From Magallana gigas (lineage: Eukaryota): 64,000 nt of DNA. The position numbers were made by a program, and so were the translations under genes. Shown here one piece after another: positions 12,849 through 40,168 of the stretch (positions within the stretch are counted from its first letter, which is position 1; each line of letters starts with the position of its first letter). Below the pieces are notes generated by a model. It worked only from the letters and a program-made list of their open reading frames with translations. It had not been told where the DNA came from and searched no databases. The stretch covers positions 16,120,001 through 16,184,000 of the forward strand of contig NC_088860.1 in NCBI RefSeq assembly GCF_963853765.1, in the 5' to 3' direction.

Positions 12849-15800
12849 CTAAAAGCGATTTTCGAAGAAGGACTCGAGAGATCCCCTTGGTTGGGCCACA
12901 GGAGGGTATCTTCTCTTTCTTTTACCAGTACCTCTGGGTGACATCCTTGATCTCTCAATGTAATCTTTCTTTTCCTACAATCAATGTCAGTGTGTCTATT
13001 ATGGTTTTAATATAGAATTAAGGACTCGAATATAAAAAGAATTTTTATTAGCATAAACTGGGTTAGTCTGTCTACTCTATAAAAATTAAAAAAGTGGTTC
13101 ATAATATATAATTATAAACTGCTGTAACCAAGTTACTCGAGTTCTAATGAACTCCAATAATAATACTCCTTATCATCTAAACAGTTGAACAGAGTAATCA
13201 ACTTTGATATTTTGCAGAAAAAAATGTTTTAAAATTACATTTCATTTACCCGGTAGATCAAAATAATGGGAATACATGTACCTGGTAAAGTTTGTCTTTC
13301 TCCTGCATTTTCCATCGCCTTCTGGTGGCCTAAAAAAAGGTAAATATTAGGATGCACACCTTTCAGTATGTATTTAGATTATCTATTGGAATGAAGAAGT
13401 CAAGATGTGGAAAATGAAAACTTTAAATTCTTTAAAAATCAAAATCAAGACTCTGGTACATTATCTACAAAATAAGTTCTTAGAAAAAAGGTTAACAGAA
13501 CCAATTCAACATTTCTATCAAAGATTGAATAGAAAATCTTATCAATTTACATTTACAATTTATACATCTATAGTACCTCACTACATCAAGGCTTATTATA
13601 CTAAAACACCATGTCAAAAGATGGCAATTTAAATGTTTTATTTGTTAATTTGTTTTTTATCAATCAATTTGGTTGAATATCATCATACATGTAGCACAGT
13701 GGTTAGAGTGTCGGGCTTGTGAACTGCAGATCAGTTCAAATCTGCCTGGGGCTTTTGTTTATAAATACATGTACTGAAATGAATTTTTGAAAATCATACT
13801 TTTTCATCCAAAAGCACATCAATATATACTTTTTACGTATCATGGTATCTACCATAGTCACATGATTTTCTGCTGATTTTAGAAAGTATTTCAAGGTGTA
13901 GTGAACCACTTTAATTTCAAGAACTAAAATCAACACTGATTTATGACTGAACTCACAGTGAACAATTAAATACGATTACTAATTTATATTAACAATATCC
14001 AAGACAAATATCCTATGCAATACATGTATAAAGGGTGTGCAAAGTGAAATGTGTTTGCTGTCAATTAACATATCATTTGTAATAATGTATTACATTTACA
14101 GCAGGAAATAATTCTTACAGTGAAAGCTATGTAAATCCCAAAGATGACATGAAAAAATATGAAGATAGCAGCAAGACTGACAATGGCATTGCGATCATAA
14201 ATCTTCACTTCTTTCATTTGGTATACGTAAGCTAAGGATTTCATTGCAGCATTTTGAGTAGCATTCAATGCAAGAAATATCAGTGCAGCCAGTACATACA
14301 GATCCTGTGAAAGAATAACGGAGCAAATAAAAAATTAATATTAAAGAACAAACATACATGTACCAGTATATGAAGCTGGTATAAATGTGTTTTACCAGTA
14401 TTTCATTTATTCATTTAGTTGCATGAATTTGTCAATTTCTGGAGTTTACTGATGAACACTGATTATGGGATTTGTTTCATTCAATTACCAGGTAAGTGAG
14501 GTATGAAATAGTTGGCAGACTTTGCTTGACGACCAGTTTAAAGGCGACAGCAGTAAGGAAAAGGGTGACATTGCACATCAGTCTGTCTGGAGAATTAACT
14601 TCAATGGAGTAGGAGGCAAAGGTCAGGCCAATGATCAGGAACTGTAACAGAGGTGCATGAGTACTAATCTACAAGGTGTTATTCTGAGAAAACATAAAAT
14701 ACAAAAGTATTTCAATGTATATACATACAATTTCTTTCAATTGAACATCAATTCCATTCATTAAGAACCAATCCAACATAGATCATTGCAATTCATAATG
14801 TTTGAAATTCTGTTCATGTCTCTCAGTTTGTAATAATTAATTGACATATTGTGTGCATATTACATGTAGCACTTTTGGTGTTTAGTGGGAATATATTTTC
14901 CAACCTTTAATTAAGGTTAGATTTGAATCTACACATTTCTTAATTTAATTTTAATTCAATTTTAAAGTTAATTTATGTGCATTGACATTTAGTCACTTGG
15001 AGAAATTGCTCACTGCCAAAATTGTTGAAAAGAATTTAAAATATATAGAGAAATGTAAAATTTTACTTCATATTATACTGAAAAATTATAATAATTACAA
15101 ACCACAATGAATATAATATTCCACACAAAATAGCCTATCTTCCTTGCCACCCTGCACTGTATATGAAGGATAGGATGGACAGTTGACCTAGCGTACTCCA
15201 CAGTTGTTTTGTCTCTGTAGGACTCAGTGTGGTTGTACAGGTTCCACTCCGAGGCATCCAGGAAGGCCTGAGTGTTGACTGAACTGAGAGAACTCTGGTC
15301 TTCAATTATCTCAATCTCATGAATCGACCTTTCTGTAGAGATGGAAATTGTCAGGTCCTGAAGTTGAAACAAACTCCATAAAGCAAAGAGTAGGGAAGTC
15401 AATGTCAGTCAAATTAGAAACAAATTAATTTTAAGGCATATTATTGAATGTATTCGATGTGCTTCCTAAAGACTTTTGTTGCAGAATTGAAAATATGATT
15501 TCTTTTATCTATGTAGATGAAATATCTATCAAACTGACAATTAATGGGCACAATATCTTTTTTGTTAATATACCTGGTACCTGCCTGATACATAAAAGTC
15601 ATTTATTCCTCTGGAGATGAAGAATACAATAATATCAAGAGCTTAAATTTACCTGAACATCCACTGGAAAGTGTTGCAATTCCAAATTCTCCTTAAAGAA
15701 GGCTTTGAATCTCCACATCAGCTGCACTCTTGGTGGATTATCATCATTGCTATGTAGAATAGAGTAGTCTATGTGTTCCTCTTCTATTGATCCGTCAATA

Positions 15801-17765
15801 TTCAAAATAATCAACTTTGGAGTCCACATCATTGATGGTTCAAAAACCTTAACGTTAGATTTTATAATACATATTATCTTTTAAAAAAATGATGCTATTT
15901 AATGCAGTAAAATATATTGTGTCTGAAGAACTAACTAAGAGGATGTATTTTAGCAAAGTATTTTTAAGGGAAGGGAGAATGTGGTTTTTCAGGGAACATT
16001 TATAGCTGTAAGCCAACTTTTATTCACAAAAGTAATACTTTATATCGCTTTTTACCAAAGATTATAAACAATGACTAATTTTTGCAATCAAGATGTAGGA
16101 GGAGTTATCCGTACAATGAGGGTACCTTATACGCAATATTTTGCCAAAAAATTACTAAGTGCAAAAGCTGGCAAAATGCACACCTCTGATATATGTACGA
16201 TTGATCTGCAAAAGAACAACTTCCTATCTTGAAAACTGTAGGAGGAGTTATTCGTACAATGAGGGTACCCTTTTGGCAGCCGCACGCCCCGCATTTCAAT
16301 AGTTTGATTTTTCCGTTGGAAAACCCGATTAAAAATAAAAGCTGCACAAAGTCACGTGCACTCGATTGGCTCTCGACTTTGATAAATATAGCAAATATTG
16401 TCTTGTTTAAAATCATTGTAGGTGGGAATTTCCTAAAATTTATAAATATCATGGTTATGTATGCATAGTATGGAAATTACATGTACATCATTCATAATAT
16501 CATATATGAGTAGCTAGCATATAAAGGTCTTCAAGGTATATGAAAATTATGATATTGCATGTATTAAGTGTGTGTAGAATATGTGGAATGAAAAATCATG
16601 GAGGTAATTACATGTGTAATAGGATAGAAGGAATAATAATATATTGAAAACATATGGCTGGACCAGGAATCGAACCCGGAATTCCTGTACCTCTAGTCAG
16701 GAGCTCTAGCACTGAGCTACCCTGGTAGATATCCATGGTCCATATAGCCCAAAGTACTTTATTCCTCCCTACTTAAATGGTCTTCATCCTTGAAGATCAC
16801 CCCAGGTTCTTCTCCTGGAAGAATTTAACCTGTTAGTTCCAGGGGCAGGTCCCAGAACCAAATGTAATAGGTAGGGAGGAATATTTAAAACATATGGCTG
16901 GACTGGGAATCAAACCCAAGACCCCTGTACCTCTAGTCAGGAGCTCTACCACTGAGCTACACAGGCCGATATCCACAGTCCATATAGCCCCAACTACTAC
17001 ACATGTATAATTTACACAGTACTCAACACTGATAAATGTGCGACAAATATCAGTAGCTTATATATTAGATTTGATAGAGTATCATAACAAAAATCACATG
17101 CATATCATAAAGTTTAACAAAAATCTTAGCATCGGTAGTTTGACTTTCGATTAATTAACAACAAATCATCAAGTATCATACGTGTAGCTGGCAAAAAGGA
17201 TCTAAGGTAGAAACTTTACAGTTGTCACAGTAGCACAATATGTATTTTATTGTACATGTATGTTGTATGCAAAGGAAAACTTGCAAAAATTTATTAACCT
17301 TTTCATCTGGCTTGATCAAGTGATCATGCCACTTTGCTTGGATGAAAATCTCTGACAGAAACTTCTGGTCCACTGTATCAATATCGTTTATTTTCAAAAA
17401 AGTGAGCTTTATTTCTACTGTCACCTAAAAAACCAAACAAAGTTAACAATATACACAGATAAACTGACAGACATGGTGATTCCAATATACATTTAACATC
17501 CAAAAATTTATTTTTTGGGACTACATGTATTATGATAAAAAATGAGCACCTTATCTTCTCTCAGAGCACTGAGATCTTTTGACAGAATTGATCGAAGAGG
17601 TGCTAATCCTTGATGATTGCTCTCTGATTCAAGTGTTAATTCCAAAAGTCGATTAAGGAGTTCATTGTTTTTCTCAATGTTGCTGGATAAAGCTTTGAAA
17701 ACCTTGGCTAACTTGACATTTTCATCTACTGTTTTCTTGGAGTCCACTGTCTCCACCTCCAACAT
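12849..17765 (-). CDS. Cys-less pentameric ligand-gated ion channel subunit, copy A (434 aa)
   Basis: Eight phase-0 exons: 17765-17550, 17424-17299, 15847-15653, 15357-15103, 14641-14489, 14304-14119, 13329-13282, 12974-12849 (TAG). pLGIC motifs: DTVDQKF..EIFIQAKWHD, WTPKL, LELQHFPVDVQDL (Pro-loop without Cys), RVARKIGYF, M2 DRLMCNVTLFLTAVAFK, SLPTISYLTYLD, and M3/M4 helices. Confidence 0.88.
13691..13755 (+). mobile_element. tRNA-derived (SINE-like) head in a channel A intron
   Basis: TAGCACAGTGGTTAGAG (A box) and GTTCAAATCT (B box); degenerate stems. Confidence 0.45.
16095..16275. repeat. Dispersed repeat fragment with a 143-bp internal duplication
   Basis: GTAGGAGGAGTTAT(C/T)CGTACAATGAGGGTACC at 16095 and 16238; probably an internal core repeat of a non-autonomous element. 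Confidence 0.45.
16615..17001. mobile_element. About 390-bp bipartite element carrying two tRNA-like units
   Basis: Direct repeats 240 bp apart, each tRNA-like on the minus strand; TGTA...TACA termini; CATG on both flanks; internal perfect 13-bp inverted repeat (16760-16772 / 16871-16883). Confidence 0.65.
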
Positions 17766-17968
17766 AATCTTTTCAAGGAGAGTGTATCAACCGTTTCTAC
17801 AAGGAACAGTAGATCTATATCATAAATCAAATTACATACAACTCTAAAATTATAGTGACTGAAGAAAATCTTATCATACATTTTTATTGATGGTTTGTTA
17901 GCTTTCCTTAGTTCAAGTATTTTTATTTACAATTTTGACGTAAACTGCAGTTTTATTTCAAGCACACA

Positions 17969-17988
17969 TGGGGGGGGGGGGGGGGGGG

Positions 17989-18037
<49 letters not shown>
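17969..18037. repeat. poly-G plus (GA)n microsatellite
   Basis: Read directly; follows TTTATTTCAAGCACACA, the same position as the (GA)n in copy B. Confidence 0.95.
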
Positions 18038-18039
<2 letters not shown>

Positions 18040-20371
18040 ATTTGTGTACAAAATAAAGGGAGGGAATACTTTAAATATATTATCAGTTTCAGCATGGTAA
18101 ATATTGTAAATACTGAAGATTCCTCATGGTGTTTTTTGCATATTGAAATGAAACTGAATGCTGTATGTATATATAGAAAAGTTTTAATTTTTTTTTTAAG
18201 AAGTAAAATAAGGAATCTACAGTATAAAAGAAATACAACTACAGTATACTTCTAAAGATATACATAAGTGGAATGGTAGTTCAACTTGCATTATATCATC
18301 TAAGGGCAGGAGGACAACATACTTACGACCAGATTAAATTCAAGGCCCAAAGATCAAATCACTAGATGTCCAATGATTGAATCACTATATATGGCAACAA
18401 ACATTTGACAGCAACTGTTTTGATGAAATGATAAAATATAAAAGTTTTTATGTTTGATAAATATGTAACTAAAAAGCTGTGACTGCAACAATATTTGATC
18501 CTCAGTCAGAAAAAACTCATAGTAATGTTATCATATCAAAGATGTTATCACTTTTTCATAATTTATAATTTTAAAACAATTGAATTGAAATGACACTTTA
18601 TCAGACACTTAGCCCATTGCAAAGGCCTAAAAAAAATTGTGTGTTTAGGGTAACACTGATGAAAAAATTAGGTTAGGAAGGTAGGTATTTTTTTAATTTT
18701 ATCATATTTTTTTCTGCATGAATTCTAAGAATGTTTGTTTGTCATATTCAAAAACAGATTTTTTAATAGAAATAACATTAAATTCACAATCATATAAAAA
18801 CAGACATCTAAAAATGGTAGGATCGGGGAATTTTTGTAGGTTAGGTTGTGTTACCCTAAACACACAACTTTTTTTTTTTTAGGCCAAATTATGACGAATA
18901 TAATATGACAAACGAGTATTTTGTGTGGATGTCAGAGTTCATATTACACTGTTGATTCAGATTTCCTGTACATGGTCTAAACATAATATACATATATGTA
19001 CATGTATATCAGAAATTGAATGCATTAAAATCATAAAAATTTCTTATAATTTCACTGGGGTTTTTTTATATAGTCAAACCAGATTTTATAGTGTCAGTTC
19101 ACAGAAGTTTTAACAGTCTTTAAAAGTGGAGCTGAAATAAAAAGAATGATATAAGGCAATAAGTTCCACTAAATTATAACACCATTAAATTATCATTAGT
19201 TTTCATAAAGTTCTTTCATTGCAAACAACTGAGACTTCAAAGGCACATAAGTGCCCCCCCCCCCCTTTCTTAGTTATTACTAATATAAGTAAAATAAGGA
19301 TAAATCTATAATACGTAATAAAAGTGTATCATTATTATATGATTACATCAATCAAATATTTTGATGTCAGCCAAATAGAAAGGGGATCACATCTCGAAGA
19401 AATTATCCCCACGGCGTCCATCCATATAAAAAAAAATAGCAGAAAAGGGGGAGGGCAGATATAACACGCTATCCTTACTTCCTTACAAAAAGAACGACAT
19501 CATTAGCTGCAAAATTAAATTCAGATACAAAAATGAAACCAACTTAAGTAAAGGAAAAAAATCAAAAGCTTTTAAATCCCAAACCTTTACTGCAAAACGT
19601 GAAAATCTTCAAACATCGTCTGCAACAATTCCGGAAGTTGCAGTAGTTGTGTAGGATCAAAAACCGATGCTATCAAAGTTCCGAATTCATTTCGCCGAAT
19701 GGTCCAAGTAATAGTTTACAACACACGTGCTTCATTTGGTATAAATCTATTTATATGTATAAAACATGATATACATAAATATTACTATCTCAGTTGCGTC
19801 GAAGGTGGGGGGGGGGGGGGAGGCTACACTTAAAATCAGAAATCTTGACAAGCTAAAAAAAAAAAGGGGTATTACGGTTATGTTATTGTCAGACTCATCC
19901 AAAACAATTCTTAACAAGCAAAACAAACAAAACAAACAAACAAAAAAAATCATGTAATTACTAATCCGTGGGGGAAGGGGTAGCGAAATATATACCTATA
20001 TAGCTTATACCTAAAACTGCAATTTTCAATATCACTCCTGACAGCATTTTTACAAAGTCAATGTATCTCTTTTTAAGATGCGTAAAAATGACTACATGCA
20101 ATTAGTTCATACATAGAACTGAGTTTAATATGAATAATAACAATTACTTATGTTTTAAAATTAATCATCTCTGACCATCCTACATCGTGTTACACGAGTA
20201 AATCATCCTTGATTTTTCATTTGCCAGGTGTGGTTAAGATCTCATCATCATTAATATGCATGTACCTATCCCCAGTCACTACTGGTCGTACGTGATGCTG
20301 ATCGTGCCTGTGCTACGGTCGTGACTCCCTTGGTTGATCCTAGCATTCAAAATCGCGTTAAGTGCTTGAGA

Positions 20372-22425
20372 GGTGTGTTCCCGTTTTGCACACATTTGAT
20401 AATTATAGAACAAAAGGTTTGATTTGTGTTGTGATTGCAATTATAGTCTGCTTTCGGTCAAAGATTTTACCTGGATTTTTACCTTTTTTTTATCAGTGCC
20501 TTAACGATAAAACAAGAAGAATACAGATATTTTGTTGTGTTTTAGGTCTAATAACTATTTGTTTTTTTCGTTTGATAAAATAAAGATAATGATATAATTA
20601 AAAAGTCTGATAAAAAAAATAATGATTAGATTAGATGAATTGACTTTTACATTTTTGTCCATTTACCTTAAATATAAAACCAAATGAATTAGGAAAAATT
20701 GCCGGTCCAAAGCCAATTGGAAGCTGATTCAATGGATCATTATATGATAAAGGGGAAAACTACATAGACAGTCATATGGATTACTCCGTGTCTCTTTTTA
20801 CAATTGAGTTGCAAATTATGTAAAACGCATGTTTATAATTGATTGTTTGGTATCAACAGAAAAAATATTATGAAAGAAAACAGATCTTTATCACAAAATA
20901 TTTCAATGTTTGAACCAGCGACCTTGACAGTAGTTCGTATGGCATCACCGCTTTAATATATGGCGGGTCACTTTCTAGTTTTTCAAATCAGAGGTTAAAT
21001 ACATAAAAAATCTGACAAAAATAATATTTTAATATTGATGCGATATACCTCAAACTGAAAAAGGTTGAAAATGCATGAATTAGGTCTACATTTGATAGGT
21101 TTTGTGAATTAATCTTTAGAGTTTTTGAAGCATGCATATAACATTTCCTATTTATCATCATACAGTTTGTCTTTTTTCTTTGATTATTCAAGATATACCA
21201 CAACATAAATGAAAAATATTTAGCAGCGTTTTCACTAGACACATTTCTTCCATTTATGTCAGCAAAAGCAATAATTAAATAGTAACATATGATATTTCTC
21301 TTCGAAATTTTAGCATCTACATGTACTTCCTTTATAGGCAGTAAGTTAAACAAAGACGCTACATACTCAACATTTTTGCAATAAACTTTCTTGTTTAAAA
21401 AAAAATAATGAAATTGTTCATGACCAAATTGATGTTTGAAATCAAATTCAAGAATATGGATGTCAATTATTATGTAAATGTGCTTTTATGCAAGTTATAT
21501 TGTAACATAAAATACATGTAAATTTCAATTGCGAGAAGATATGTTTTTATTTATTTTATTGTCAATTGCCCTCGCAGGAATAGTGATATACATTTTGTAG
21601 ACTATAGCAATTAAGCAATTATCTCACCTGGTCAAATTCCCGTTTCGCACACATTTTTTCGATACCTAATTTTCAAATGTGTGCAAAACGGGAACAAACC
21701 AGTGGCGTAGCTAGACCAGAAAAGAAGTGCATGCTTAAAATGGCAGGGGGTATGGGGCCGCCATGAGACTCCCAGTGGGTCCAGGGCGAAGCCTGATGGG
21801 GGCCCAGGGAGCGAAGGCCCCGGAAGCTCATGGATTCTGACGATTTTTAACACTAAAAAATCATCGCAGAAATTGAAGGAATGCTCACTATTTAAGCATA
21901 TTTTTAGGCAGTTAAAATTGTTTTTGGTTTAGTTTAGGCTTAAAATAAAATCACAAAACTTCATTAAAAGCTAAAAGAAGAAAAAAACTTTTGACGTTTG
22001 TTTTTGACCCACTCAAAGCTTTTATTCTTAAGTTCATTTTCACCTAGTTTATGGTAATGAATATTTCAATAAAACTGTGATATTCTATGGGGGAAATTTA
22101 AAATGATGTGTAAAACTAAGTTCAAATGCAAAATAAATCTTTGCTTTATTAGGTACATGCATTGTGTACTGTTTCTTTAATATGGTACTCTAAGACCACA
22201 TTGCGTGTCTATATTTGGTACTTAAGACGTCCTTGTTTAGCATTGATAAATTTGTCGATGCCCCGTTGACGGGTTGTTGGAATAACTAACTATGGACCTT
22301 AATACTTGAATTCTTTTTGTAAATTCTTTTTTCTTTATTTTTTTACTGAGTTTCTTCCTTTTTTTCCAAAATGATTTGCATGCTCAGGCATATAAGCATA
22401 CATGGTAGCTACGCCACTGCAAACC
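20372..22425. mobile_element. Non-autonomous DNA transposon with about 28-bp TIRs and 8-bp TSD (GG...CC termini; Merlin- or MULE-like)
   Basis: GCTTGAGA at 20364-20371 and 22426-22433. Left TIR is GGTGTGTTCCCGTTTTGCACACATTTGA; its perfect 23-bp complement is at 21673-21695. The right TIR is interrupted by a nested MITE. Confidence 0.8.
21700..22419. mobile_element. MITE with 15-bp TIRs and 5-bp TSD, nested in the right TIR of the previous element
   Basis: CAGTGGCGTAGCTAG ... GTAGCTACGCCACTG (14/15 match); CAAAC at 21695-21699 and 22420-22424. Confidence 0.85.
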
Positions 22426-23559
22426 GCTTGAGATTGCAAGGTAAGACACACGGGCGTTTGACGTGCCAGTCGAAGGTGTCATGTTTGGAGCCGGGTTGCC
22501 ACTTGCAACTTGCGATGCTTATAGCTAGAACCGTGCTTGCGTCTAACGATTATCGAGCAACGACGTACGTTTACCTTTTGAACGGTGGTAATAACGCGTC
22601 GTAGGTCACCTGCAAGTCAATCGTTTCGACGTCTTTATGTGCCTCACGACAGTTGCTCAGACAGTTTTTAGTTTTTACATTAAAGATTTTTTTTTCTTTA
22701 AACCTGCACTGAAATGAATTTACCGTATAGGCAAGTGAATATTGAAAAATACATCAAAATAACTCGAAGAAAAGGAAAACTATAAGCTGTAGTTGCTGCT
22801 TTGATGATTAAACTAGCTAAGACTAGATTTAGACACGAATAAACAATGTTTTCAAAACATAATTTATAATTCGTATCTGATACCATAAAGGACTGAATAT
22901 TGCTCCGAAATCTAGAAGAAAGTCTGCGCAAAAAATATACTAATTTTAGCGAAGTAATTATCAAAAAATAATATTCCTGGCCACTATTATATCTCGTTGT
23001 GACGTTTTTGTTAACTTTTTGTTATCTTCAGAAAAGTTCTTACGAAACTCATTTATAATTCAATCATTTTAAAAAGCAAAGCCTACAAAATTCTTCCCTG
23101 TTATTCTGATTTTGATATTATGAATTTTGGGGTAAAAAGATGAGTTTCTGGACAAAATATCGCTGAAAACTGAAAAATTTCTAAACGTTTATTCTTAGGA
23201 CAACAATTTTAAAACATGAGATCAAATTTCTGCGGTTTCATAACATAAGAGACAGGATATAAAAAAAAAACTTCTTCAAAAACGGAAATTTGTGGGTTAA
23301 AAAGACTATATTTTTGACGAATTTGGGAAAAAAAATGAAAATGAATTATTATTGATAAAGTATAAAACTATTAAGTATAAACAAGTCGACTTTTTAAAAC
23401 TTTTTAGACAGCATACTTCATCACGATATGATGATAATCTTTACCTTTGACTAAACATCCCAATTTTGGGTTAATTAAACTCTTTTTACAGAAAAATTTA
23501 GAAAAACTGAATTTATGACTGCCGTCTTTTTAATTTGAACTATTAATTAATCAGTTTTT

Positions 23560-24090
23560 CTCAAAAACATGTATAACAATTTAGGTTTTGGATATATATG
23601 GAACTGTAAAGAACAATTTAATGAACATGTATTCTTACATGAAGTGAAGCAGAGGTTGACCGACATGTCTATACAAGAAGGACATGGCTACTTTGAAAAT
23701 TCTCCCAAATGTATAATGTATAAGCACTTATGTAATAATTTTGAAGTACAATAATATTCAACAAAACCAATACCAACTGTATATGTTCAATTTATAAGTA
23801 AATACCGTTTATCCTCTCATCAACTCGAGATTGAGCGTGGCAGATTTTATAATATCCATAGAAATGAGAGAGTTTGTAAACTATGTTCACTATCACAGAT
23901 TGAAGGTGAGTTTCATTTTATTTTAATCTGTCCATTTTATAAGGAAATAAGAAAGTTGTATGTAAAAAAATATTATTATGAAAAGCCTTCTGTTTTTAAA
24001 CTTATTCAATTACTTTCAACAAAGAATATCAAAGAGTTGTGCAATTTGGGAAAATACCTATATAAATACTCAAAATTACAATAAAATTAT
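23560..24090 (+). mobile_element. 5'-truncated LINE (CR1/L2-type ORF2 C-terminus), degenerate
   Basis: Translates as LGFGYIWN...KYRLSSHQLEIERGRF...ERVCKLC...IEGEFHFILICPFY..IRK, the typical non-LTR ORF2 C-terminal Cys/His motif; internal stop at 23752-23754. Confidence 0.85.
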
Positions 24091-24299
24091 AATTACTTTT
24101 TGTTTTGATAATATACTCTTCATTATCCTGTTTACTTCTGTCATGTATATTTTGCAGACTGTGCACACGCAGTCTAATACAAGATTGTGATGGTCTTTCT
24201 TTTTTGTTTTTAAAAATGCTTTCATATGTATATATGTTAAACCTATGAATCGTATGGTTCTTGGTAATAAACAATACAATATAGTAATATACATATGTA

Positions 24300-24846
24300 C
24301 ATATGAGAGCTAGTAAAAAAAAAAGATTTTCTAGGAGCCCCTGTCCCAGGGGGTCCTGATTTTACAATTTTGGTAGAAGGCTTCACGGACATGATAGTTT
24401 TCGAATACATAATTATATGAGAAGTTTTCGAATACATATATGAGAATAGTAGAAAATTTTCTAAGGTGTAATAAATTTTTACTACATGCTGATATTGGCT
24501 TGACCATAAGGTCTGAATCCCTGACCAGGGACAATGAACTCACAATTTTGGTAGATGGCTTCATGGACACCATAACCATTTATTATTTTTTTCCCAAAGT
24601 GTGTGGGAGTAGAGGAGACGATGTTGCAAAATGCGGCTATTTGCATATTTGGCCCGTCTATGAGCACATGGGGGTGTTAAGTCAAGAATCGTACAATTTA
24701 GATTCCTCTTACCGTAGAGATTTTTCACATTGGTTAAAAATGGTTTGTAGTTTTCGAGAAGATTCTGCAGTTAAAATGTAAAATTGTTGATGCGCACGGC
24801 GATGAAGGAAGATCAGTTGCAATAGGTCACATTAATGACTCAGGCT
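24300..24846 (+). mobile_element. Helitron/Pearl-type non-autonomous element with two degenerate Cg170-like satellite monomers
   Basis: Two about 170-bp-spaced ACAATTTTGGTAGA.GGCTTCA.GGACA units; 3' end GCAATAGGTCACATTAATGACTCAGG resembles the CvA/Cg170 element tail (recognised from memory). Confidence 0.65.
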
Positions 24847-24982
24847 TAACATACATTGATTTTGTATCCTGTAATGATAAAGTGTATCATGATAAATAAA
24901 CCAGCACATTCAAAAATAGGAGTTAATTAAGTGTTTTTAAAAGCAGAGTTATTGCCCTTTTTGCAGAGCACCAGCAGCTCGG

Positions 24983-27900
24983 CTAGTAGCGACTTTCGAA
25001 GAAGGACTCGAGAGATCCCCTTGGTTGGGCCACAGGAGGGTATCTTCTCTTTCGTTTACCAGTACCTCTGGGTGACATCCTTGATCTCTCAATGTAATCT
25101 TTCTTTTCCTACAATCAATGTCAGTGAGTCTAAGCTAGTTTAAAAAAATGTTTACAAGAATGTTTCAAATAAAGCAGAATTGAATTGAGTATATTAAACT
25201 GGGTTGAGCAGTTTACTCTACAAAAATTCTTATAATACACAAGCTATTGTAACCAAGTTCATATGATTATATTTAATTCAAACAGGAGTAATCAAATTGA
25301 TTTATTTTTAAAGATTACAATTATTTTAGATCAAAATATTGAGAGTACATTTACCTGGTAAAGTTTGTCTTTTTCCTGCATTTTCCATCGCCTTCTGGTG
25401 GCCTCAAAAAGATAAATGCTACCCTCCGTATTTTTAGATTACATATACTATAACAACTCAAGAAGACAAAATTTGCAAAAAATGTCTCGGTCATCACAAT
25501 TATTACAATTGATTTCAAGAATTCAAACTGTTAAATAATAAAAAATGATTACTCAATTATATGATTACTGTAAACCAATTGTACTATTATTCTCAACTAC
25601 TTAATTTCGCAATTTACCCGAGATGAACTTGATCGCGGCTGTAATACATGTAACATTATGTTTTTTTAGATTACCCCCGTTTCGTCACATATATTGGTCA
25701 TACCGTGTTTTATGTGAACCCCGTTTTTTGTAAGACAGTACTTCCAATAGCCTGGTTCCGGCCTACCCATTATGGGTAGGCCGGAACCAGGCTATACTCC
25801 CGAGTGTTTCATTAAAGGCACACGTTTTTTTTTCTTTTATTACAATTACATGTTTAGTAAATACTGGTTTGCGGTAAGAAATATTTGCGACAATGAGGCT
25901 CTTGCGAACTTCCCGACAATTTCTCGCAAGCAATTCAAATGGTTTACAGTATCATTGATGTCCAAGGTTAATAACCTAAGCAATGGAATTTTAAAGGGGC
26001 ATGGTCACGATTTTGGTCAAAAATTATTTTTCCGATTTGAATAATTACACTGCTTCAGTGAGGCATTCTTATTATTAGGCAAACAAAATTGAGTGTCATT
26101 TGTTGAGTTATGTGCGAATTACAGAGCTTACAATTCTTTGACATGTAAACAAAGCTTTTGTTTAAATTTTGAATGTTGAAGTGAAAATTTTAAATTTAGA
26201 CTTAAGATGAATGTGTTAAACATGTTAAACGTTAGGATCTGTTTATCTATGCTTAAAATGAAGAAGAAGATAAAAAATCAGCTTGAAAAAGGTTTTTAAT
26301 TGGTATATTCGATTGAACCTATGTAAACAAAAACAGGGCACGGGCCTTGTTTACACGACACAGATTTGTGAGCTCTGTATTTTGCCTAAAACTTAAAGAC
26401 TGACTCTCAAATTTCATTTGATCATTAGAAATGCATTTCTTAAGCATTGTTAATAATAAAAATAGAATTTGACGAAAATCGTGATCATGCCCTTAAAAGT
26501 GAATCGTGTCTGTTGTCGATCAATAATTCTTACAGTGAAGGCTATATAAATTCCAAAGACGATATGAAACAATATGAAGATAACAGCAAGGCTGGCAATG
26601 GAATTGCGATCATAAATCTTTACTTCCTTCAATTGATAAATGTAAGCTAAGGATTTCATTGCAGCATTCTGAGTAGCATTTAATGCAAGGAATATCAGTG
26701 CAGCCAGTACATACAGATCCTGTGAAAGATATTGAAAAGCATATAATTTATATACTGGTATAAAGTTCTATAATTTCATACTTTCATTTAGCTACATGAA
26801 CAATATCGGGAGCTTGTGAGCACTGATTATGGGATTTGTTTCATTCAATTACCAGGTAAGTGAGGTATGAAATAGTTGGCAGACTTTGCTTGACGACCAG
26901 TTTGAAGGTGACAGCAGTAAGGAAAAGGGTGATGTTGACAGCCAGTCTGTCTCCATTATCAACTTCAATGGAGTAGGAGGCAAAGGTCAGGCCAATGATC
27001 AGGAACTGAAACAGAGGTGCATTACTACTAATCTACTAGGTGTTATACCGAGATTTCTATGAAAACATAAAATACCGAAGACTAAAGTATATTTATGTAT
27101 ATCCATACATTCCGTTTCATTGAACATCACTCACATTCAAAAAGAAGCAAAGCCAAAAAATTGTTGGAGAAGCCCTTTGGGCTTCACACGATTTGATCAC
27201 ATGACCAACCAAGTTCATATCTAATTGAACTTTTCAACTTGCTGTTTATCTCTTAATTATGCTGAAAAATTATAATTATTACAAACCACAATGAATATGA
27301 TATTCCACACAAAATAGCCTATCTTCCTTGCCACCCTGCACTGTATATGAAGGATAGAATGGACAGTTGACCTAGCGTACTCGACAGTTGTTTTGTCTCT
27401 GTAGGACTCAGTGTGGTTGTACAGGTTCCACTCTGAGGCATCCAGGAAGGCCTGAGTGTTGACTGAACTGAGAGAACTCTGGTCTTCAATTATCTCAATC
27501 TCATGAATCGACTTTTCTGTACAGATGGAAATTGTCAGGTCCTGAAGTTGAAACAAAGAGTATGTAAGTTAATGCCAGTTAAATTACCGACAAATTAATA
27601 ATAAATATAATGAATGGTGGAAGGATTTTTTTTTTACCAGCAAGGCATTATTTAATGTATTCAGTGTGCTTCCTCAAGACTTGATCTTCACTGAATTGAA
27701 AATATCATTTCTATATCTATATTGAAGTAGTACTTGCCTGTTACACTTTAAGTCATTTATTGCTCTGGAGAAGTAGTACAATGACATCAAGAGCTTGATT
27801 TTACCTGAACATCCACTGGAAAGTGTTGCAATTCCAAATTCTCCTTAAAGAAAGCTTTGAATTTCCACATCAGCTGCACTCTTGGTGGATTGTCATCATT

Positions 27901-29051
27901 GCTATGTAGAATAGAGTAGTCTATGTGTTCCTCTTCTATTGATCCGTCAATATTCAAAATAATCAACTTTGGAGTCCACATCATTGATGGTTCAAATACC
28001 TTGATGTTTGATTCAAATACACATTTTCATTTTTAAAATGATGCTATTAAATGCCTTAAAATATATCGTGTCTGAATAGCTAAGAGGATGTACCTATTGC
28101 AAATTATTTTTAGGGGATTGAGGGGGCCATGTGATTGGTGGAATGTGGTTCTAAATATTATCTGTACAGCATGATATGTATTCTATTGTACATGTATGTT
28201 GTATGAATTCAAATGGACAGTCTATCAACTTTAAAATGTATTTACCTTTTCATCTGGCTTGATCAAGTGATCATGCCACTTTGCTTGGATGAAAATCTCT
28301 GACTGAAACTTCTGGTCCACTGTATCAATATCATTTATTTTCATAAAAGTGAGCTTTATTTCTACTGTCACCTAAAAAACCAAAACAAACTTGACAATAC
28401 ATTATATCATATGCATAAAACTGGATGGACAGACAGAATAAGGATAAACAGATCGTGCTCTGATGATTATCTCCCTTCATAAATTCATGAGTTTCAACAT
28501 ATGCATTCAGTGTATATATTATGTATAATCTCTGTGAGACCCCAGTCATTACAAGATCTTGATATGCAAGTTATCATGTAGGCCTATAAAAAAATAAAAT
28601 AGATTTAAAATAAAATCAACAAGAGGAAACATGGTAAATTGAGAGTGTAAAAGTTTTAAGAAAAAAGTTGATTCTCTTTTCTGATTTCAGAAAAAAGTAT
28701 AAAGTACAGACCTCAATACAATTCATGTATACAGACAGATAGAGACACCGACAATATTATTATGGTGATTCAAATATTTATTTTGCCTCCATAACTTTAT
28801 TATTTGGGAATTTTACGATAAAAAATGATTTATACCTTATCTTCTCTTGCAGCACTGAGATCTTTTGACAGAATTGATCGAAGAGGTGCTAATCCTTGAT
28901 GATTGCTCTCAGATTCAAGCGTTAATTCAAAAAGTTGATCAAGGAGTTCATTGTTTTTCTCAATGTTGCTGGATAAAACTTTGAAAACCTTGGCTAACTT
29001 GACATTTTCATCTTTTGTTTTCTTGGAGTTCACTGTCTCCACCTCCAACAT
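24983..29051 (-). CDS. Cys-less pentameric ligand-gated ion channel subunit, copy B (434 aa), tandem paralogue
   Basis: Exons 29051-28836, 28371-28246, 27999-27805, 27541-27287, 27005-26853, 26719-26534, 25402-25355, 25108-24983 (TAG). Exon lengths are identical to copy A; about 30 aa differences by manual count. M2 is DRLAVNITLFLTAVTFK. Confidence 0.88.
25747..25795. repeat. Perfect 49-bp palindrome (24-bp arms, 1-nt loop)
   Basis: ATAGCCTGGTTCCGGCCTACCCAT-T-ATGGGTAGGCCGGAACCAGGCTAT. Confidence 0.9.
25991..26496. mobile_element. Kolobok-like MITE (TTAA target site) in intron 6 of copy B
   Basis: TTAA-AGGGGCATGGTCACGATTTTGGTCAAA ... TTTGACGAAAATCGTGATCATGCCC-TTAA; absent from the paralogous intron of copy A. 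Confidence 0.75.
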
Positions 29052-29289
29052 AATCTATCTTAGGAGAGTGTATCAGCTGTTTCTAAAAGGAATAGTATCC
29101 ATGCATCTCAATCAAATTATATGCATGCATCTCAATCAAATTACATACAACTCAAAATCGATAGTGACTGAAGAAATTCTTAAAGAGTCAGTGATGGTTT
29201 TAAAAGCTTCAAATGACTTTCCTGAGTGCAAGTTTTTATTTTGTTTAGTTACAGATTTGACAAACTGGCACTTTATTTCAAGCACACAC

Positions 29290-29291
<2 letters not shown>

Positions 29292-29352
<61 letters not shown>
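29292..29352. repeat. (GA)n microsatellite
   Basis: Read directly. Confidence 0.95.
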
Positions 29353-29355
<3 letters not shown>

Positions 29356-29562
29356 ACCACCATAAATAGGTAAATCTATACTACGTTATAAAAGAGTATA
29401 ATGATAAAATAATTAAATTAGTTATTTGGATGTTAGCAAATAGAAAGGGAATCACATCTCAAAGAAAATTATCCCCATCCATCCATATGAAAAAATATCA
29501 GAAAAGGGGGTGGGGCCATGGGGAGAGGCCTAGAGGTAATACACGTTATCCTTACTTTTTTT

Positions 29563-29663
29563 CACAGGAGTCGGCAATCTTATCAATAGATAATACCTAG
29601 AGTCAAAATAAGTAAAAACCCGGTATTGGGTAATATTTATTGATAAGATTACCGACTCCTGTG
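29563..29663. mobile_element. 101-bp mini-MITE with 26-bp TIRs and 8-bp TSD
   Basis: CACAGGAGTCGGCAATCTTATCAATA ... TATTGATAAGATTACCGACTCCTGTG (25/26); CTTTTTTT on both sides; absent at the paralogous site in copy A (about 19475). Confidence 0.8.
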
Positions 29664-30127
29664 CTTTTTTTAAAGGAAAAAAAGCGATATCAGTAAGTAC
29701 AAAATTACATTCATATACAAAAAAAATAAAACCAACTCCAGTAACCCCCCCCCAACCCCCCCCCCAACCCCCCAAAAAAAACCCCAAGCAGTCTAAAAAA
29801 CCATACCTTAGGGGCTTTACTGTAGAATGTTAAAAGCAAACATCGTCTGCAACAATTCCGGATGTCGCAGTAGTTGTGTACGATTAAAACCCAATCGTAT
29901 CAAAGTCTCCGGGTTCGACTTTCCAAGTAAGGATGCTATCAGAGTTCTGTCGTTGGCAGACAAGAATTACTACAGTCTACTGGTAAATTTTGTTACCATT
30001 GGTATGCCGATAAAATGTAACTTTTTATGACAAATTTCTTTCTTTAAATTTACATTATAAAATTATCAAAAATATGCCTCGGAACCCCCCCCCCCTTGCA
30101 AACTGAAAAATTTTCTGGATCCGAATG

Positions 30128-37800: not shown

Positions 37801-40168
37801 TTCGACCATTGAGCTCAAACCTAATTGAAACCTTTTAAAAGGGCATTTCATTAATTCAAGCGAAAAAAATCACGAACGAGCCATTTTCATAAGATAATAA
37901 TTTGCAAGCGCATCATCTCGCTCGTAGCTCGACAACTGACATTCAAATTTTCATTATTCCGTTATCCATTAAAAATTTTCTAGCACTACTAAAGCACTGC
38001 AAACATTAGGAAAAGGCAAATGCAATTTGCAAATTGTCATCCCAAACCGTGATCATGCTTCTTGAATTTTTTATTTATCGTATGATAACAAAGTCTTATA
38101 TACATGTAGATATACGAACAGTTCACTATCATTGTTGTCACTGTCATTGTTGTCCTTGTCTTTGTTGTCCCTGTCTTTGTTGTCCCTGTCTTTGTTGTCA
38201 CTGTCTTTTTTGTCATTCTCTTTGTTGTCACTGTCTTTTTTGTCACTCTCTTTGTTGTCAATGTCTTTTTTGTCACCCTCTTTGTTGTCACTGTCTTTTG
38301 TTGTAACTATCTTTGTTGTCACTGTCATTGCTGTCCCTGTCTTTGTTGGCCCTGTCTTTGTTGTCCCTGTCTTTGTTGTCACTGTCTTTTTTGTCACTCT
38401 TTGTTGTCACTGTCTTTGTTGCCACTCTCTTTGTTGTCACTGTCTTTTGTTGTAACTATCTTTGTTGTCACTCTCTTTGTTGTCACTGTCTTTTTTGTCA
38501 CTTTCTTTGTTGTCCCTGTCTTTGTTGTCACTGTCTTTGTTGTCATTCTCTTTGTTGTCACTGTCTTTGTTATCACTGTCTTTTTTGTCATTCTCTTTGT
38601 TGTCACTGTCTTTTTATTGTCACTCTCTATGTTGTCACTGTCTTTTTGTCACTCTCTTTGTTGTCACTGTCTTTTGTTGTAACTATCTTTGTTGTCTTTG
38701 TTGTCCCTGTCTTTGTTGTCCCTGTCTTTGTTGTCCCTGTCTTTGTTGTCACTGTCTTTTTTGTCACTTTTTGTTGTCACTGTCTTTTGTTGTAACTATC
38801 TTTGTTGTCACTGTCTTTTGTTGTAACTATCTTTGTTGTCACTGTCATTGTTGTCCCTGTCTTTGTTGTCCCTGTCTTTGTTGAAACAGTGTTTTGTTGT
38901 CACTCTCTTTGTTGTCATTGTCTTTTTTTGTCACTCTCTTTGTTATCATTGTCTTTTGTTGTAACTATCTTTGTTGTCATTGTTGTCTCTGTCTTTGTTG
39001 TCATTGTCTTTGTTGTCCCTGTCTTTGTTGTCACTGTCTTTTTGTCACTCTTTTTGTTGTCACTGTCTTTTGTTGTAACTATCTTTGTTGTCACTGTTAT
39101 TGTTGTCCCTGTCTTTGTTGTCCCTGTCTTTGTTGTCACTCTCTTTGTTGTCACTGTCTTTTTTGTCACTCTCTTTGTTGTCACTGTCTTTTTTGTCACT
39201 CTCTTTGTTGTCACTGTCTTTTGTTGTAACTATCTTTGTTGTCACTGTCATTGTTGTCCCTGTCTTTGTTGTCACTGTCTTTTTTGTCCCTGTCTTTGTT
39301 GTCACTGTCTTTTTGTCACTCTCTTTGTTGTCACTGTCTTTTGTTGTAACTATCTTTGTTGTCACTGTCTTTTGTTGTAACTATCTTTGTTGTATGACAG
39401 TCTTTTGTTGTCACTGTATTTGTTGTCACTGTCTTTGTTGTGACAGTCTTTTGTTGTCCCTGTCTTTGTTGACCCTGTCATTGATGTCACCTACTTTGCT
39501 GTTTCTGTCTTTGTTGTACTACCTTTGTTGTCACTGTCATTTGCTGTCATTATCTATGTTTTCACAGTGTTTTGTTTTCACTGTCTTTGTTGTCACTGTC
39601 TTTGTTATCACTGTCTTTTACTGTCACTGCCATTTGTTGTCATCATCGCTGTGGTCACTTTATTTGCTGTCACTTTATTTGTTGCAATTGTCATTGTTGT
39701 CACCTACTTTGCTGTCATTGTTTTTGTTATTACTGTCTTTGCTGTCACTATTTTTGTTGTCACTGTCTTTGTTGACACTGTTATTTTTTGTCAATATCTT
39801 TGCTGTCACTATCATTGTTGTCATTGTCTTTGTTGTCCCTACCTCTGCTATCATTGTCTTTGTTGTCACTGTCTTTTGTTGTCACTGTCTTTTTTGACAT
39901 TCTCTTTGCCCTCACTATCTTTGTTGCCACTGTCTTTGTTGTCATTGTATATGTATTCATTGTATATGTTGTCATTCCCTATTTTTGTCACCGTCTTTGT
40001 TGTCACTTTCTGTGTTGTCACTTTCTTTATTGTTTATATGGTAGAAGTGGACAACTGCCTCCACGAGGACATGTGTAAGAATGGGGGCACCTGTGTCAGT
40101 GACGAGATGTCCTACTCCTGTGTGTGTCGGGAAGGCTGGACAGGAGTCCACTGTGAAAAAGGTATCAA

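What the first reader, a model, noticed from the sequence alone, without database searches (positions are those of the whole stretch)
12849..29051. Tandem pair of Cys-less (Pro-loop) pentameric ligand-gated channels
Seen: two intact 8-exon, 434-aa genes with the full pLGIC motif set. At the Cys-loop position they read ENLELQHFPVDVQDL, so Glu and Leu replace the two cysteines while the invariant Pro is kept. Known: canonical animal Cys-loop receptors carry C-x13-C; Cys-less forms are typical of prokaryotes (GLIC, ELIC) and are reported in some invertebrates with largely unknown ligands. Inference: a recently duplicated orphan channel pair that could form homo- and hetero-pentamers.
Basis: partly seen in the sequence, partly recalled or inferred. 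Interest (0 to 1): 0.75.

Follow-up and report, generated by a model that had tools for sequence, protein, structure and literature searches.

The report
Oyster Cys-less channel gene pair
Two neighbouring Pacific oyster genes encode subunits of an already published, uncharacterised branch of the neurotransmitter-receptor channel family that lacks the usual disulphide loop, and the whole branch also lacks an export signal, so its sensor domain may face the inside of the cell.

Summary
Two intact 8-exon, 434-aa genes lie in tandem on the minus strand (12849-17765 and 24983-29051). All introns are GT-AG. Both read ENLELQHFPVDVQDL at the Cys-loop position. My models equal two RefSeq Magallana gigas proteins residue for residue, and RNA contigs confirm six coding junctions of copy B.

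Full-length proteins pass Pfam Neur_chan_LBD (41 bits, cut-off 26). The AlphaFold model matches glycine and GABA-A receptor chains (Foldseek E 4e-21).

The copies are paralogues, not alleles. Crassostrea angulata has the same tandem pair, and each oyster copy groups with its angulata orthologue.

The family is already published as the Cys-less Pro-loop clade (Jaiteh 2016). An older model of copy A, K1RDB6, is in that paper's alignment. As stated, the finding is therefore known.

One aspect appeared in no paper I found. All 49 aligned clade members, plus flatworm, rotifer and metagenome relatives inspected separately, lack a signal peptide. They have almost no glycosylation sites in the ligand-binding domain and carry a conserved basic helix after M4. 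This fits a cytosol-facing ligand-binding domain, at roughly even odds and untested.

The parts
28836..29082 (-). Copy B exon 1 (5'UTR 29052-29082, ATG at 29051, 72 codons). An in-frame stop at 29055-29057 lies inside the exon.
   Evidence: RNA joint 29082->29807 and joint 28369->28834
29807..29860 (-). Copy B upstream non-coding 5'UTR exon (3' end exact at 29807, 5' end approximate)
   Evidence: RNA contig joint with CT..AC ends and depth in bins 29626-30023
28246..28371 (-). Copy B exon 2 (42 codons, strands beta1-beta2). Alone it gives a weak Neur_chan_LBD hit.
27805..27999 (-). Copy B exon 3 (65 codons), with WTPKLIILN and the Pro-loop residues E167-Q179 at 27805-27843
27287..27541 (-). 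Copy B exon 4 (85 codons): end of the Pro-loop (D180, L181 at 27536-27541), beta7-beta10, pre-M1 Arg, first half of M1
   Evidence: the RNA joint fixes the donor at 27287
26853..27005 (-). Copy B exon 5 (51 codons): rest of M1, the M1-M2 loop EVDNGDR and M2 (26892-26966), M2-M3 linker
26534..26719 (-). Copy B exon 6 (62 codons): M3, the 18-aa M3-M4 loop, M4
25355..25402 (-). Copy B exon 7 (16 codons): conserved basic post-M4 motif ATRRRWKMQEKDKLYQ
24983..25108 (-). Copy B exon 8 (41 codons plus stop): basic C-terminal tail
   Evidence: identical to the RefSeq protein; junction not seen in RNA contigs
17550..17765 (-). Copy A exon 1 (ATG at 17765; in-frame stop at 17787-17789)
17299..17424 (-). 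Copy A exon 2
15653..15847 (-). Copy A exon 3, with Pro-loop residues E167-Q179 at 15653-15691
15103..15357 (-). Copy A exon 4
14489..14641 (-). Copy A exon 5 (the M1-M2 loop EVNSPDR and M2 at 14528-14602; most diverged at protein level)
14119..14304 (-). Copy A exon 6 (M3, short loop, M4)
13282..13329 (-). Copy A exon 7 (basic post-M4 motif)
12849..12974 (-). Copy A exon 8 plus stop

Best explanation
These are two intact, transcribed, tandemly duplicated Pacific oyster (Magallana/Crassostrea gigas) genes. [quoted passage not shown]

Shown: each protein has a GLIC-like beta-sandwich ligand-binding domain (LBD) and a GlyR/GABA-A-like four-helix pore domain. An aspartate sits at M2 -1', a leucine at 9', and the FPxD Pro-loop lacks its disulphide.

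Inferred from the family: five subunits form a cation-type channel opened by a still unknown ligand.

Shown: the duplication arose in the Magallana lineage after it split from C. virginica, and both copies remain under purifying selection. The copies differ most in the selectivity filter, M2 and M4.

Inferred: the clade has no signal peptide and a net-negative M1-M2 loop. It also has a conserved basic helix after M4. I therefore lean (about even odds) to an N-in/C-in orientation, with the LBD in the cytosol.
For: Gene models and RNA junctions. Exact identity to RefSeq proteins of M. gigas.

Family identity: Pfam Neur_chan_LBD scores 41 bits against a cut-off of 26 for both copies, and Neur_chan_memb 29.9 against 28.1 for copy B. 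The PDB phmmer search covers residues 71-376, best to the GLIC-GlyR alpha1 chimera 4x5t at E 2.5e-20. The AlphaFold2 model has mean pLDDT 78.5, with ten strands followed by four long helices. Foldseek top hits are GlyR and GABA-A chains, E 4e-21, TM-score 0.60/0.75. Invariant residues are P175, F174, D177, R251 and P307.

Published clade: K1RDB6 is an old model of copy A and is in the Jaiteh 2016 alignment. Relatives occur in molluscs, corals, nemerteans, an annelid, flatworms and rotifers.

Paralogy: gene tree and the C. angulata tandem pair. Overall dN/dS is about 0.35.

Topology lean.
Against: There are no functional data for any member of this subfamily.

Neur_chan_memb is below its cut-off for copy A (21.3 against 28.1).

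The E7-E8 junction was not seen in the RNA contigs I laid.

Pentamer formation, ion selectivity and gating are inferred from homology only.

Every characterised pLGIC has an extracellular or periplasmic LBD. That is a strong prior against the cytosolic-LBD part of the statement.
Confidence: 0.85

Rival explanations
1. The identity is the same, but the orientation is canonical. The LBD is extracellular or luminal, as in every studied pLGIC, and is translocated without a cleavable signal peptide (M1 acting as an N-exo signal anchor, or an unrecognised signal). The basic post-M4 helix would then lie on the outer face against the LBD.
For: All solved pLGICs have the LBD outside, and these proteins match them over the whole core. 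Planarian relatives are reported in mechanosensory neurons with a seizure-like RNAi phenotype (cited in PMC9874803), which suits a surface receptor. Some canonical receptors also have a short post-M4 helix (my own knowledge).
Against: No hydrophobic N-terminal segment exists in any of the 49 aligned members or in the flatworm, rotifer and metagenome relatives. Maximum Kyte-Doolittle 10-mer hydropathy in the first 40 aa is at most 1.95, against 2.4-3.0 in six canonical oyster pLGICs. In copy B an in-frame stop lies in the mature 5'UTR. The N-flank of M1 is about +3 and its C-flank is net negative. The LBD has a median of 0 N-glycosylation sequons, against 1-4 in controls. In the human membrane proteome, large translocated N-terminal domains are typically preceded by a signal sequence, and N-cyt multipass proteins are mostly even-numbered (PMC13220792).
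Confidence: 0.45
2. The two copies are allelic haplotypes, falsely placed in tandem by the assembler of a highly heterozygous genome.
For: Oyster genomes are very polymorphic (my own knowledge). Exons are 90-98% identical between the copies.
Against: An independent chromosome-level assembly of C. angulata has both genes in the same order, strand and spacing. Each gigas copy is sister to its angulata orthologue with support of 100/97 and 100/99: 8 and 3 residue differences, against 30 between the copies. Introns differ by large indels and are only 78-88% identical where they can be aligned. RefSeq models both loci in both species.
Confidence: 0.02
3. One or both copies are decaying duplicates with no channel function.
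For: dN exceeds dS in exon 5 (0.108 against 0.070). Predicted isoforms skip exon 2 or frameshift the tail.
Against: Both reading frames and all 14 splice-site pairs are intact. Overall dN/dS is 0.35. Both copies are retained with few changes in C. angulata. Copy B is transcribed and correctly spliced. All family-invariant residues are present.
Confidence: 0.05
4. The genes are a recent lateral acquisition from a bacterium or protist, or contamination. Jaiteh et al. raised lateral transfer as one possibility for the clade.
For: By sequence the LBD is closest to cyanobacterial GLIC among solved structures. The M3-M4 loop is short, as in prokaryotes.
Against: Each gene has eight exons with spliceosomal introns. 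A 45-55% identical paralogue on another chromosome shows matches that start and end close to this gene's exon limits. Homologues occur across molluscs, nemerteans, annelids, flatworms, rotifers and corals. The locus lies inside a 51-Mb chromosome, with conserved neighbours in C. angulata. Any transfer would be ancient.
Confidence: 0.02
5. The channel sits in the mitochondrial inner membrane, inserted like the four-helix Tim17/22/23 proteins with both ends in the intermembrane space. The LBD would then be in a periplasm-like compartment.
For: The protein has four TM helices, no cleavable signal, and a bacterial-like LBD.
Against: The loops that would face the matrix (M1-M2 and M3-M4) are net negative or neutral rather than positive. 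The basic tail would face the intermembrane space. No presequence-like N-terminus is present.
Confidence: 0.04

Closest known systems
Metazoan Cys-less 'Pro-loop' pLGIC clade (Jaiteh, Taly and Henin 2016, PMC4795631; flatworm members in PMC9874803)
   Same: The Pro-loop has a polar residue and then a hydrophobic residue in place of the two Cys, and the FPxD motif is kept. An acidic residue sits just before M2. The distribution is dominated by Lophotrochozoa. K1RDB6, an older model of copy A, is in the published alignment.
   Different: Nothing places it outside the clade. The published work trimmed the N- and C-termini. It did not mention the missing signal peptide or the conserved basic post-M4 helix (one search found no occurrence of 'signal peptide', 'N-terminal' or 'C-terminal').
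GLIC (Gloeobacter proton-gated channel) and the GLIC-GlyR alpha1 chimera 'Lily' (PDB 4x5t)
   Same: These are the best sequence matches among solved structures (E 2.5e-20 for the chimera, about 1e-12 for GLIC). They share the Cys-less loop, a very short M3-M4 loop and an acidic ring at the inner end of M2.
   Different: GLIC is a bacterial protein exported to the periplasm. The oyster genes have 8 exons, a 70-aa hydrophilic N-terminal extension with a long predicted helix, and a 57-aa basic tail after M4. By sequence the pore domain is closer to GlyR/GABA-A than to GLIC.
Canonical metazoan Cys-loop receptors (GlyR, GABA-A, nAChR)
   Same: The fold is the same (Foldseek E 4e-21, TM-score up to 0.75). 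They share WxPxxxxxN, the pre-M1 Arg, the 9' Leu and the SLPxxSY M2-M3 linker, which resembles that of GlyR/GABA-A.
   Different: The oyster proteins have no C-x13-C disulphide, no signal peptide and no long M3-M4 intracellular domain. Their LBDs have almost no glycosylation sequons and a loop-B region without an aromatic residue. The RefSeq names ('acetylcholine receptor subunit alpha', 'GABA receptor beta-3-like') are automatic and misleading.

Membership tests
pLGIC / Pro-loop receptor superfamily | Neur_chan_LBD domain (Pfam PF02931) above the gathering score | tested here: met
   41.6 bits (copy B) and 40.9 bits (copy A) against a cut-off of 26
pLGIC / Pro-loop receptor superfamily | Neur_chan_memb pore domain (PF02932), four TM helices | tested here: met
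   Copy B scores 29.9 against a cut-off of 28.1. Copy A scores 21.3, below the cut-off. Both align to solved chains through M4, and the model has four long helices after the beta sandwich.
pLGIC / Pro-loop receptor superfamily | Invariant Pro in the beta6-beta7 loop (FPxD) | tested here: met
   F174, P175 and D177 are invariant in 49 sequences
pLGIC / Pro-loop receptor superfamily | Overall fold matches solved pLGIC subunits | tested here: met
   Foldseek against PDB: the top 50 matches shown are all GlyR/GABA-A chains, E about 1e-20, TM-score 0.55-0.60 (by the model's length) and 0.67-0.75 (by the chain's length)
pLGIC / Pro-loop receptor superfamily | Assembly as a pentamer around a central pore | not testable with these tools
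The A+B pair job gave no verdict.
pLGIC / Pro-loop receptor superfamily | Ligand-gated ion conduction | not testable with these tools
   Needs electrophysiology
Canonical metazoan Cys-loop receptors | C-x13-C disulphide flanking the loop | tested here: not met
   Glu167 and Leu181 occupy the two positions in both copies. No Cys pair is conserved in the family: only C247 (43 of 49) and C79 (21 of 49) recur in the LBD.
Canonical metazoan Cys-loop receptors | Cleavable N-terminal signal peptide that places the LBD outside | tested here: not met
   A hydropathy scan shows none in 49 members, while six canonical oyster pLGICs show one. An in-frame stop lies in the 5'UTR of copy B mRNA. SignalP was not available.
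Canonical metazoan Cys-loop receptors | Long M3-M4 intracellular domain and a short tail after M4 | tested here: not met
   The M3-M4 loop is 18 aa and the post-M4 tail is 57 aa. Canonical oyster controls end within about 10 aa of M4.
Metazoan Cys-less Pro-loop clade (Jaiteh 2016) | Cys-less loop with a polar first and a hydrophobic second residue, grouping with Lophotrochozoan Cys-less sequences | tested here: met
   The loop reads E..FPxD..L. The nearest relatives are molluscs, nemerteans, an annelid, flatworms, rotifers and corals. K1RDB6, a partial model of copy A, is in the paper's S1 alignment.
Prokaryotic pLGICs (GLIC/ELIC type) | Bacterial or archaeal gene, intronless, exported to the periplasm | tested here: not met
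   There are eight exons with GT-AG introns in an oyster chromosome, and no export signal.

The most novel reading that the evidence does not exclude
The whole metazoan Cys-less clade, including this oyster pair, may be inserted N-in/C-in, so that the 'extracellular' ligand-binding domain sits in the cytosol. These would then be pentameric channels gated by an intracellular ligand or condition, at the plasma membrane or on an organelle. Loss of the disulphide and of glycosylation sites would follow from life in a reducing compartment. The conserved [KR]RRRxMxEKD[KR]xY helix after M4 and the variable hydrophilic N-terminal extension would be cytosolic regulatory or trafficking modules.
Probability: 0.45. 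Interest if true: 0.85.

Novelty: already known. Interest (0 to 1): 0.45.

Why it matters
As stated, the finding adds little. The clade was described in 2016 and both genes are in RefSeq, under misleading names.

Its value is as a clean, RNA-supported and structurally well-predicted example of a branch of the neurotransmitter-receptor superfamily whose ligand, ion selectivity and cell biology are all unknown.

If the family-wide lack of a signal peptide really means a cytosol-facing sensor domain, it would be the first pLGIC with reversed orientation. It would also explain why these animals kept a disulphide-free form. The open question of what Cys-less animal pLGICs do would then have a direct test, namely applying ligands from the inside.

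The flatworm members have been proposed as anthelmintic targets (PMC9874803). Orientation would decide how a drug must reach the binding site.

Tried and rejected
- Single exons against Pfam gave only a weak Neur_chan_LBD hit for exon 2 (E 1.9e-4) and nothing for exons 3 and 4.
- Exon 4 alone against PDB gave only chance hits. Exon 3 alone gave GLIC at E about 0.1-0.5. The full-length database proteins were needed.
- Complex prediction on residues 69-404 of B with A gave no verdict (score 0.02, alignments not used). This is neither support nor evidence against binding.
- A profile search with the 49-sequence alignment added almost no new taxa, because only the 8000 best word-sharing candidates were scored.
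- The raw-read RNA run X24 gave reads only on an intronic high-copy repeat, with none on exons at about 1% sampling. It says nothing about expression level or transcript ends.
- The DNA run X2 covers copy B at a word depth of about 30-50, but without a genome-wide baseline I could not turn this into a copy number.
- Four literature searches for any discussion of pLGIC orientation, missing signal peptides or intracellular pLGICs found nothing relevant. The library lacks most subscription journals, so this is not proof of absence.
- I considered and rejected allelic haplotypes, pseudogenes and recent lateral transfer; a mitochondrial location I judged unlikely (see the rival explanations).
Full report
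**What is in the sequence**

A stop-to-stop scan of the minus strand between 12.8 and 29.1 kb shows two parallel series of conserved open segments. Joining them at GT..AG sites gives two 8-exon genes, all in phase 0, each with a 1305-nt CDS encoding 434 aa.

- Copy B exons: 29051-28836, 28371-28246, 27999-27805, 27541-27287, 27005-26853, 26719-26534, 25402-25355 and 25108-24983.
- Copy A exons: 17765-17550, 17424-17299, 15847-15653, 15357-15103, 14641-14489, 14304-14119, 13329-13282 and 12974-12849.

Both read ENLELQHFPVDVQDL across the exon 3/exon 4 junction, so Glu and Leu replace the two cysteines. The copies differ at 30 of 434 residues, with dN 0.036 and dS 0.103. No third copy or fragment lies in the window.

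**Independent support for the models**

The two translations are identical to database proteins P0205 (copy A, XP_034330349.2) and P0207 (copy B, XP_011457008.3). Both are from Magallana gigas, named 'acetylcholine receptor subunit alpha' and 'alpha-like'. This also identifies the genome as Pacific oyster, as earlier scan notes had said.

Contigs of two RNA runs laid on copy B show joints at exactly my exon borders for introns 1 to 6. That includes the ambiguous exon 4 donor at 27287. The E7-E8 joint was not covered.

The same contigs show a 5'UTR intron from 29082 to 29807. The mature mRNA therefore contains the in-frame stop at 29055-29057, two codons before the ATG. No upstream coding exon can be joined in frame.

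**What the proteins are**

- Pfam: the full-length proteins pass Neur_chan_LBD at 41 bits against a cut-off of 26. Neur_chan_memb scores 29.9 (copy B) and 21.3 (copy A) against 28.1.
- PDB by sequence: copy B aligns over residues 71-376. The best match is the GLIC-GlyR alpha1 chimera 4x5t (E 2.5e-20), followed by GLIC (about 1e-12) and GABA-A gamma2 and GlyR alpha2. The LBD is therefore GLIC-like and the pore domain GlyR-like.
- Structure: an AlphaFold2 model built on a 49-sequence alignment has mean pLDDT 78.5, with 85-92 over most of the core. It shows ten strands and four long helices. Its best PDB fold matches are GlyR and GABA-A chains (E 4e-21, TM-score 0.60/0.75).
- Conserved residues: family-invariant residues include F174, P175, D177, R251 (pre-M1) and P307 (M2-M3).
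- Pore: M2 reads D(-1')R(0')LAVNITLFL(9'). An acidic -1' ring is the usual mark of cation selectivity, an inference also drawn for flatworm relatives in PMC9874803.
- Binding site: read by eye from the protein sequence, the loop-B region (TEKSIHE) has no aromatic residue, so nothing points to a classical transmitter.

**Paralogues, not alleles**

An exon 4 search of 1.8 billion representative proteins found 242 relatives. A word-index search named them: many bivalves, gastropods, a chiton and stony corals. Cluster look-ups added nemerteans, an annelid, flatworms and rotifers.

C. angulata has one orthologue of each copy, with 8 differences to A and 3 to B, against 30 between A and B. Its chromosome carries the two genes in the same order and strand, about 7.5 kb apart, next to a large EGF-repeat gene.

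A maximum-likelihood tree groups A with A-angulata (100/97) and B with B-angulata (100/99). The two pairs are sisters (99/97), and C. virginica, Saccostrea and Ostrea lie outside. The duplication is thus young but older than the gigas/angulata split.

The oyster genome holds one further subfamily member, on another chromosome, at 45-55% identity. Its matches start and end close to this gene's exon limits. It also holds many distant, intronless canonical pLGIC genes.

**Already known**

Jaiteh et al. [quoted passage not shown] Their S1 alignment contains K1RDB6_CRAGI. K1RDB6 belongs to the same 90% cluster as these proteins and is a partial old model of copy A.

Flatworm members were described in 2023 (PMC9874803). 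As written, the finding is a correct re-discovery.

**What I did not find in the literature**

Every clade member examined starts with a hydrophilic segment of 50-213 aa. In the 49 aligned sequences, the highest Kyte-Doolittle 10-mer hydropathy in the first 40 residues is at most 1.95 and mostly below 1.3. No 19-mer before the LBD exceeds 1.32. Six canonical oyster pLGICs, taken as controls, score 2.4-3.0 with obvious signal peptides, have a Cys at the loop position, and end just after M4.

Other features, from the 49-sequence alignment unless stated:

- N-glycosylation: the LBD has a median of 0 sequons (mean 0.43), against 1-4 in the controls.
- Cysteines: no Cys pair is conserved.
- Loops: the M1-M2 loop is net negative. 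The M3-M4 loop is 18 aa in all but ten of the 49 aligned members.
- Tail: the 25 residues after M4 carry 8-12 Lys/Arg in most members. They include the conserved motif [KR]RRRxMxEKD[KR]xY, which the model builds as a straight extension of M4 at pLDDT about 88-90.
- Breadth: the loop motif and hydrophilic N-termini recur in flatworm, rotifer, nemertean, annelid and two metagenome sequences. The full post-M4 motif recurs in the flatworm Opisthorchis, the rotifer and the nemertean Tubulanus, with looser basic tails in the annelid and in Lineus.

**Reading of these features**

Without a signal peptide, M1 should act as the signal anchor. Its N-flank (RVARK, +3) is more positive than its C-flank (EVDNGDR, net negative), which favours N-in. 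Four helices then put the C-tail inside as well, agreeing with its charge. A recent census of human membrane proteins reports that large translocated N-terminal domains are typically preceded by a signal sequence. It also reports that N-cyt multipass proteins are mostly even-numbered TMD pairs with short, slightly negative outside loops (PMC13220792).

All of this fits a cytosol-facing LBD, and a reducing compartment would also explain the lost disulphide. Against it stands the strong prior that every studied pLGIC has its LBD outside. I used only a hydropathy scan, not SignalP or an experiment, so I put the odds near even.

I reached it from the sequence before seeing that note (then) and tested it only in silico.

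**Other points on the pair**

- Seven of the 30 residue differences fall in residues 280-297, which cover the M1-M2 loop and M2 from -4' to 13' (binomial p 2e-4). Position -2' is Pro in copy A and Gly in copy B. Position 2' is Met in copy A and Ala in copy B.
- Exon 5 has dN 0.108 against dS 0.070.
- Synonymous divergence is uneven. Exon 6 has 10 synonymous codon changes in 62 codons, against 13 in 372 elsewhere (p 4e-4). Introns 5 and 6 are barely alignable. This suggests gene conversion over the 5' half or a mosaic history, and I did not resolve which.
- RefSeq isoforms skip exon 2 (copy A). In copy B an acceptor 10 nt further downstream in exon 7 frameshifts the tail and removes the basic motif.

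Noticed in passing
window 14489-14641 and 26853-27005 (exon 5 of both copies): Differences between the paralogues cluster in the selectivity filter and M2: 7 of 30 fall in residues 280-297 (binomial p 2e-4). Position -2' is Pro or Gly and position 2' is Met or Ala. Exon 5 has dN 0.108 against dS 0.070.
   Followed up: partly
window 14119-14304 vs 26534-26719 and introns 5-6: Synonymous divergence is about 4-5 times higher in exon 6 (dS 0.32) than in exons 1-5 (0.04-0.09). Introns 5 and 6 hardly align. Possible causes are gene conversion over the 5' half or a mosaic age.
   Followed up: partly
window 15972-17231, inside intron 2 of copy A: A 1.2-kb insertion absent from copy B holds two tRNA-derived SINE-like copies (about 16611-16736 and 16836-16976). 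ARAGORN calls a degenerate tRNA at 16895-16967.
   Followed up: no
window 25845-26441, intron 6 of copy B: A very high-copy repeat. DNA contig word depth is up to about 131,000, against 30-50 in the flanks. The repeat is also abundant in RNA runs, and all raw RNA reads of run X24 landed here.
   Followed up: no
window 17991-18036 and 29292-29353: Perfect (GA)23 and (GA)31 microsatellites sit about 230-300 bp upstream of the ATG of copy A and copy B. They lie inside the duplicated block. In copy B the microsatellite is inside the 5'UTR intron.
   Followed up: no
window 25355-25402 and 17299-17424: RefSeq isoforms X2: in copy B an acceptor 10 nt downstream in exon 7 frameshifts the tail to KAMENAGKRQTLPGKERLH and drops the conserved RRR motif. 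In copy A exon 2 (42 aa, beta1-beta2) is skipped.
   Followed up: partly
window 38123-40033: A 1.9-kb minisatellite of 127 copies of a 15-nt unit (TCACTGTCTTTGTTG, 78% matches) causes the strong AT skew. The C. angulata neighbour on that side is a 1686-aa EGF-repeat protein.
   Followed up: no
G000:C2:57521485-57526361 (locus L002): A third member of the same subfamily in the oyster genome, 45-55% identical, whose matches start and end close to this gene's exon limits. Its Pro-loop reads ENLELDDFPFDVQDL.
   Followed up: partly
window 56984-57133: A run of 150 N (assembly gap or mask), left untouched.
   Followed up: no
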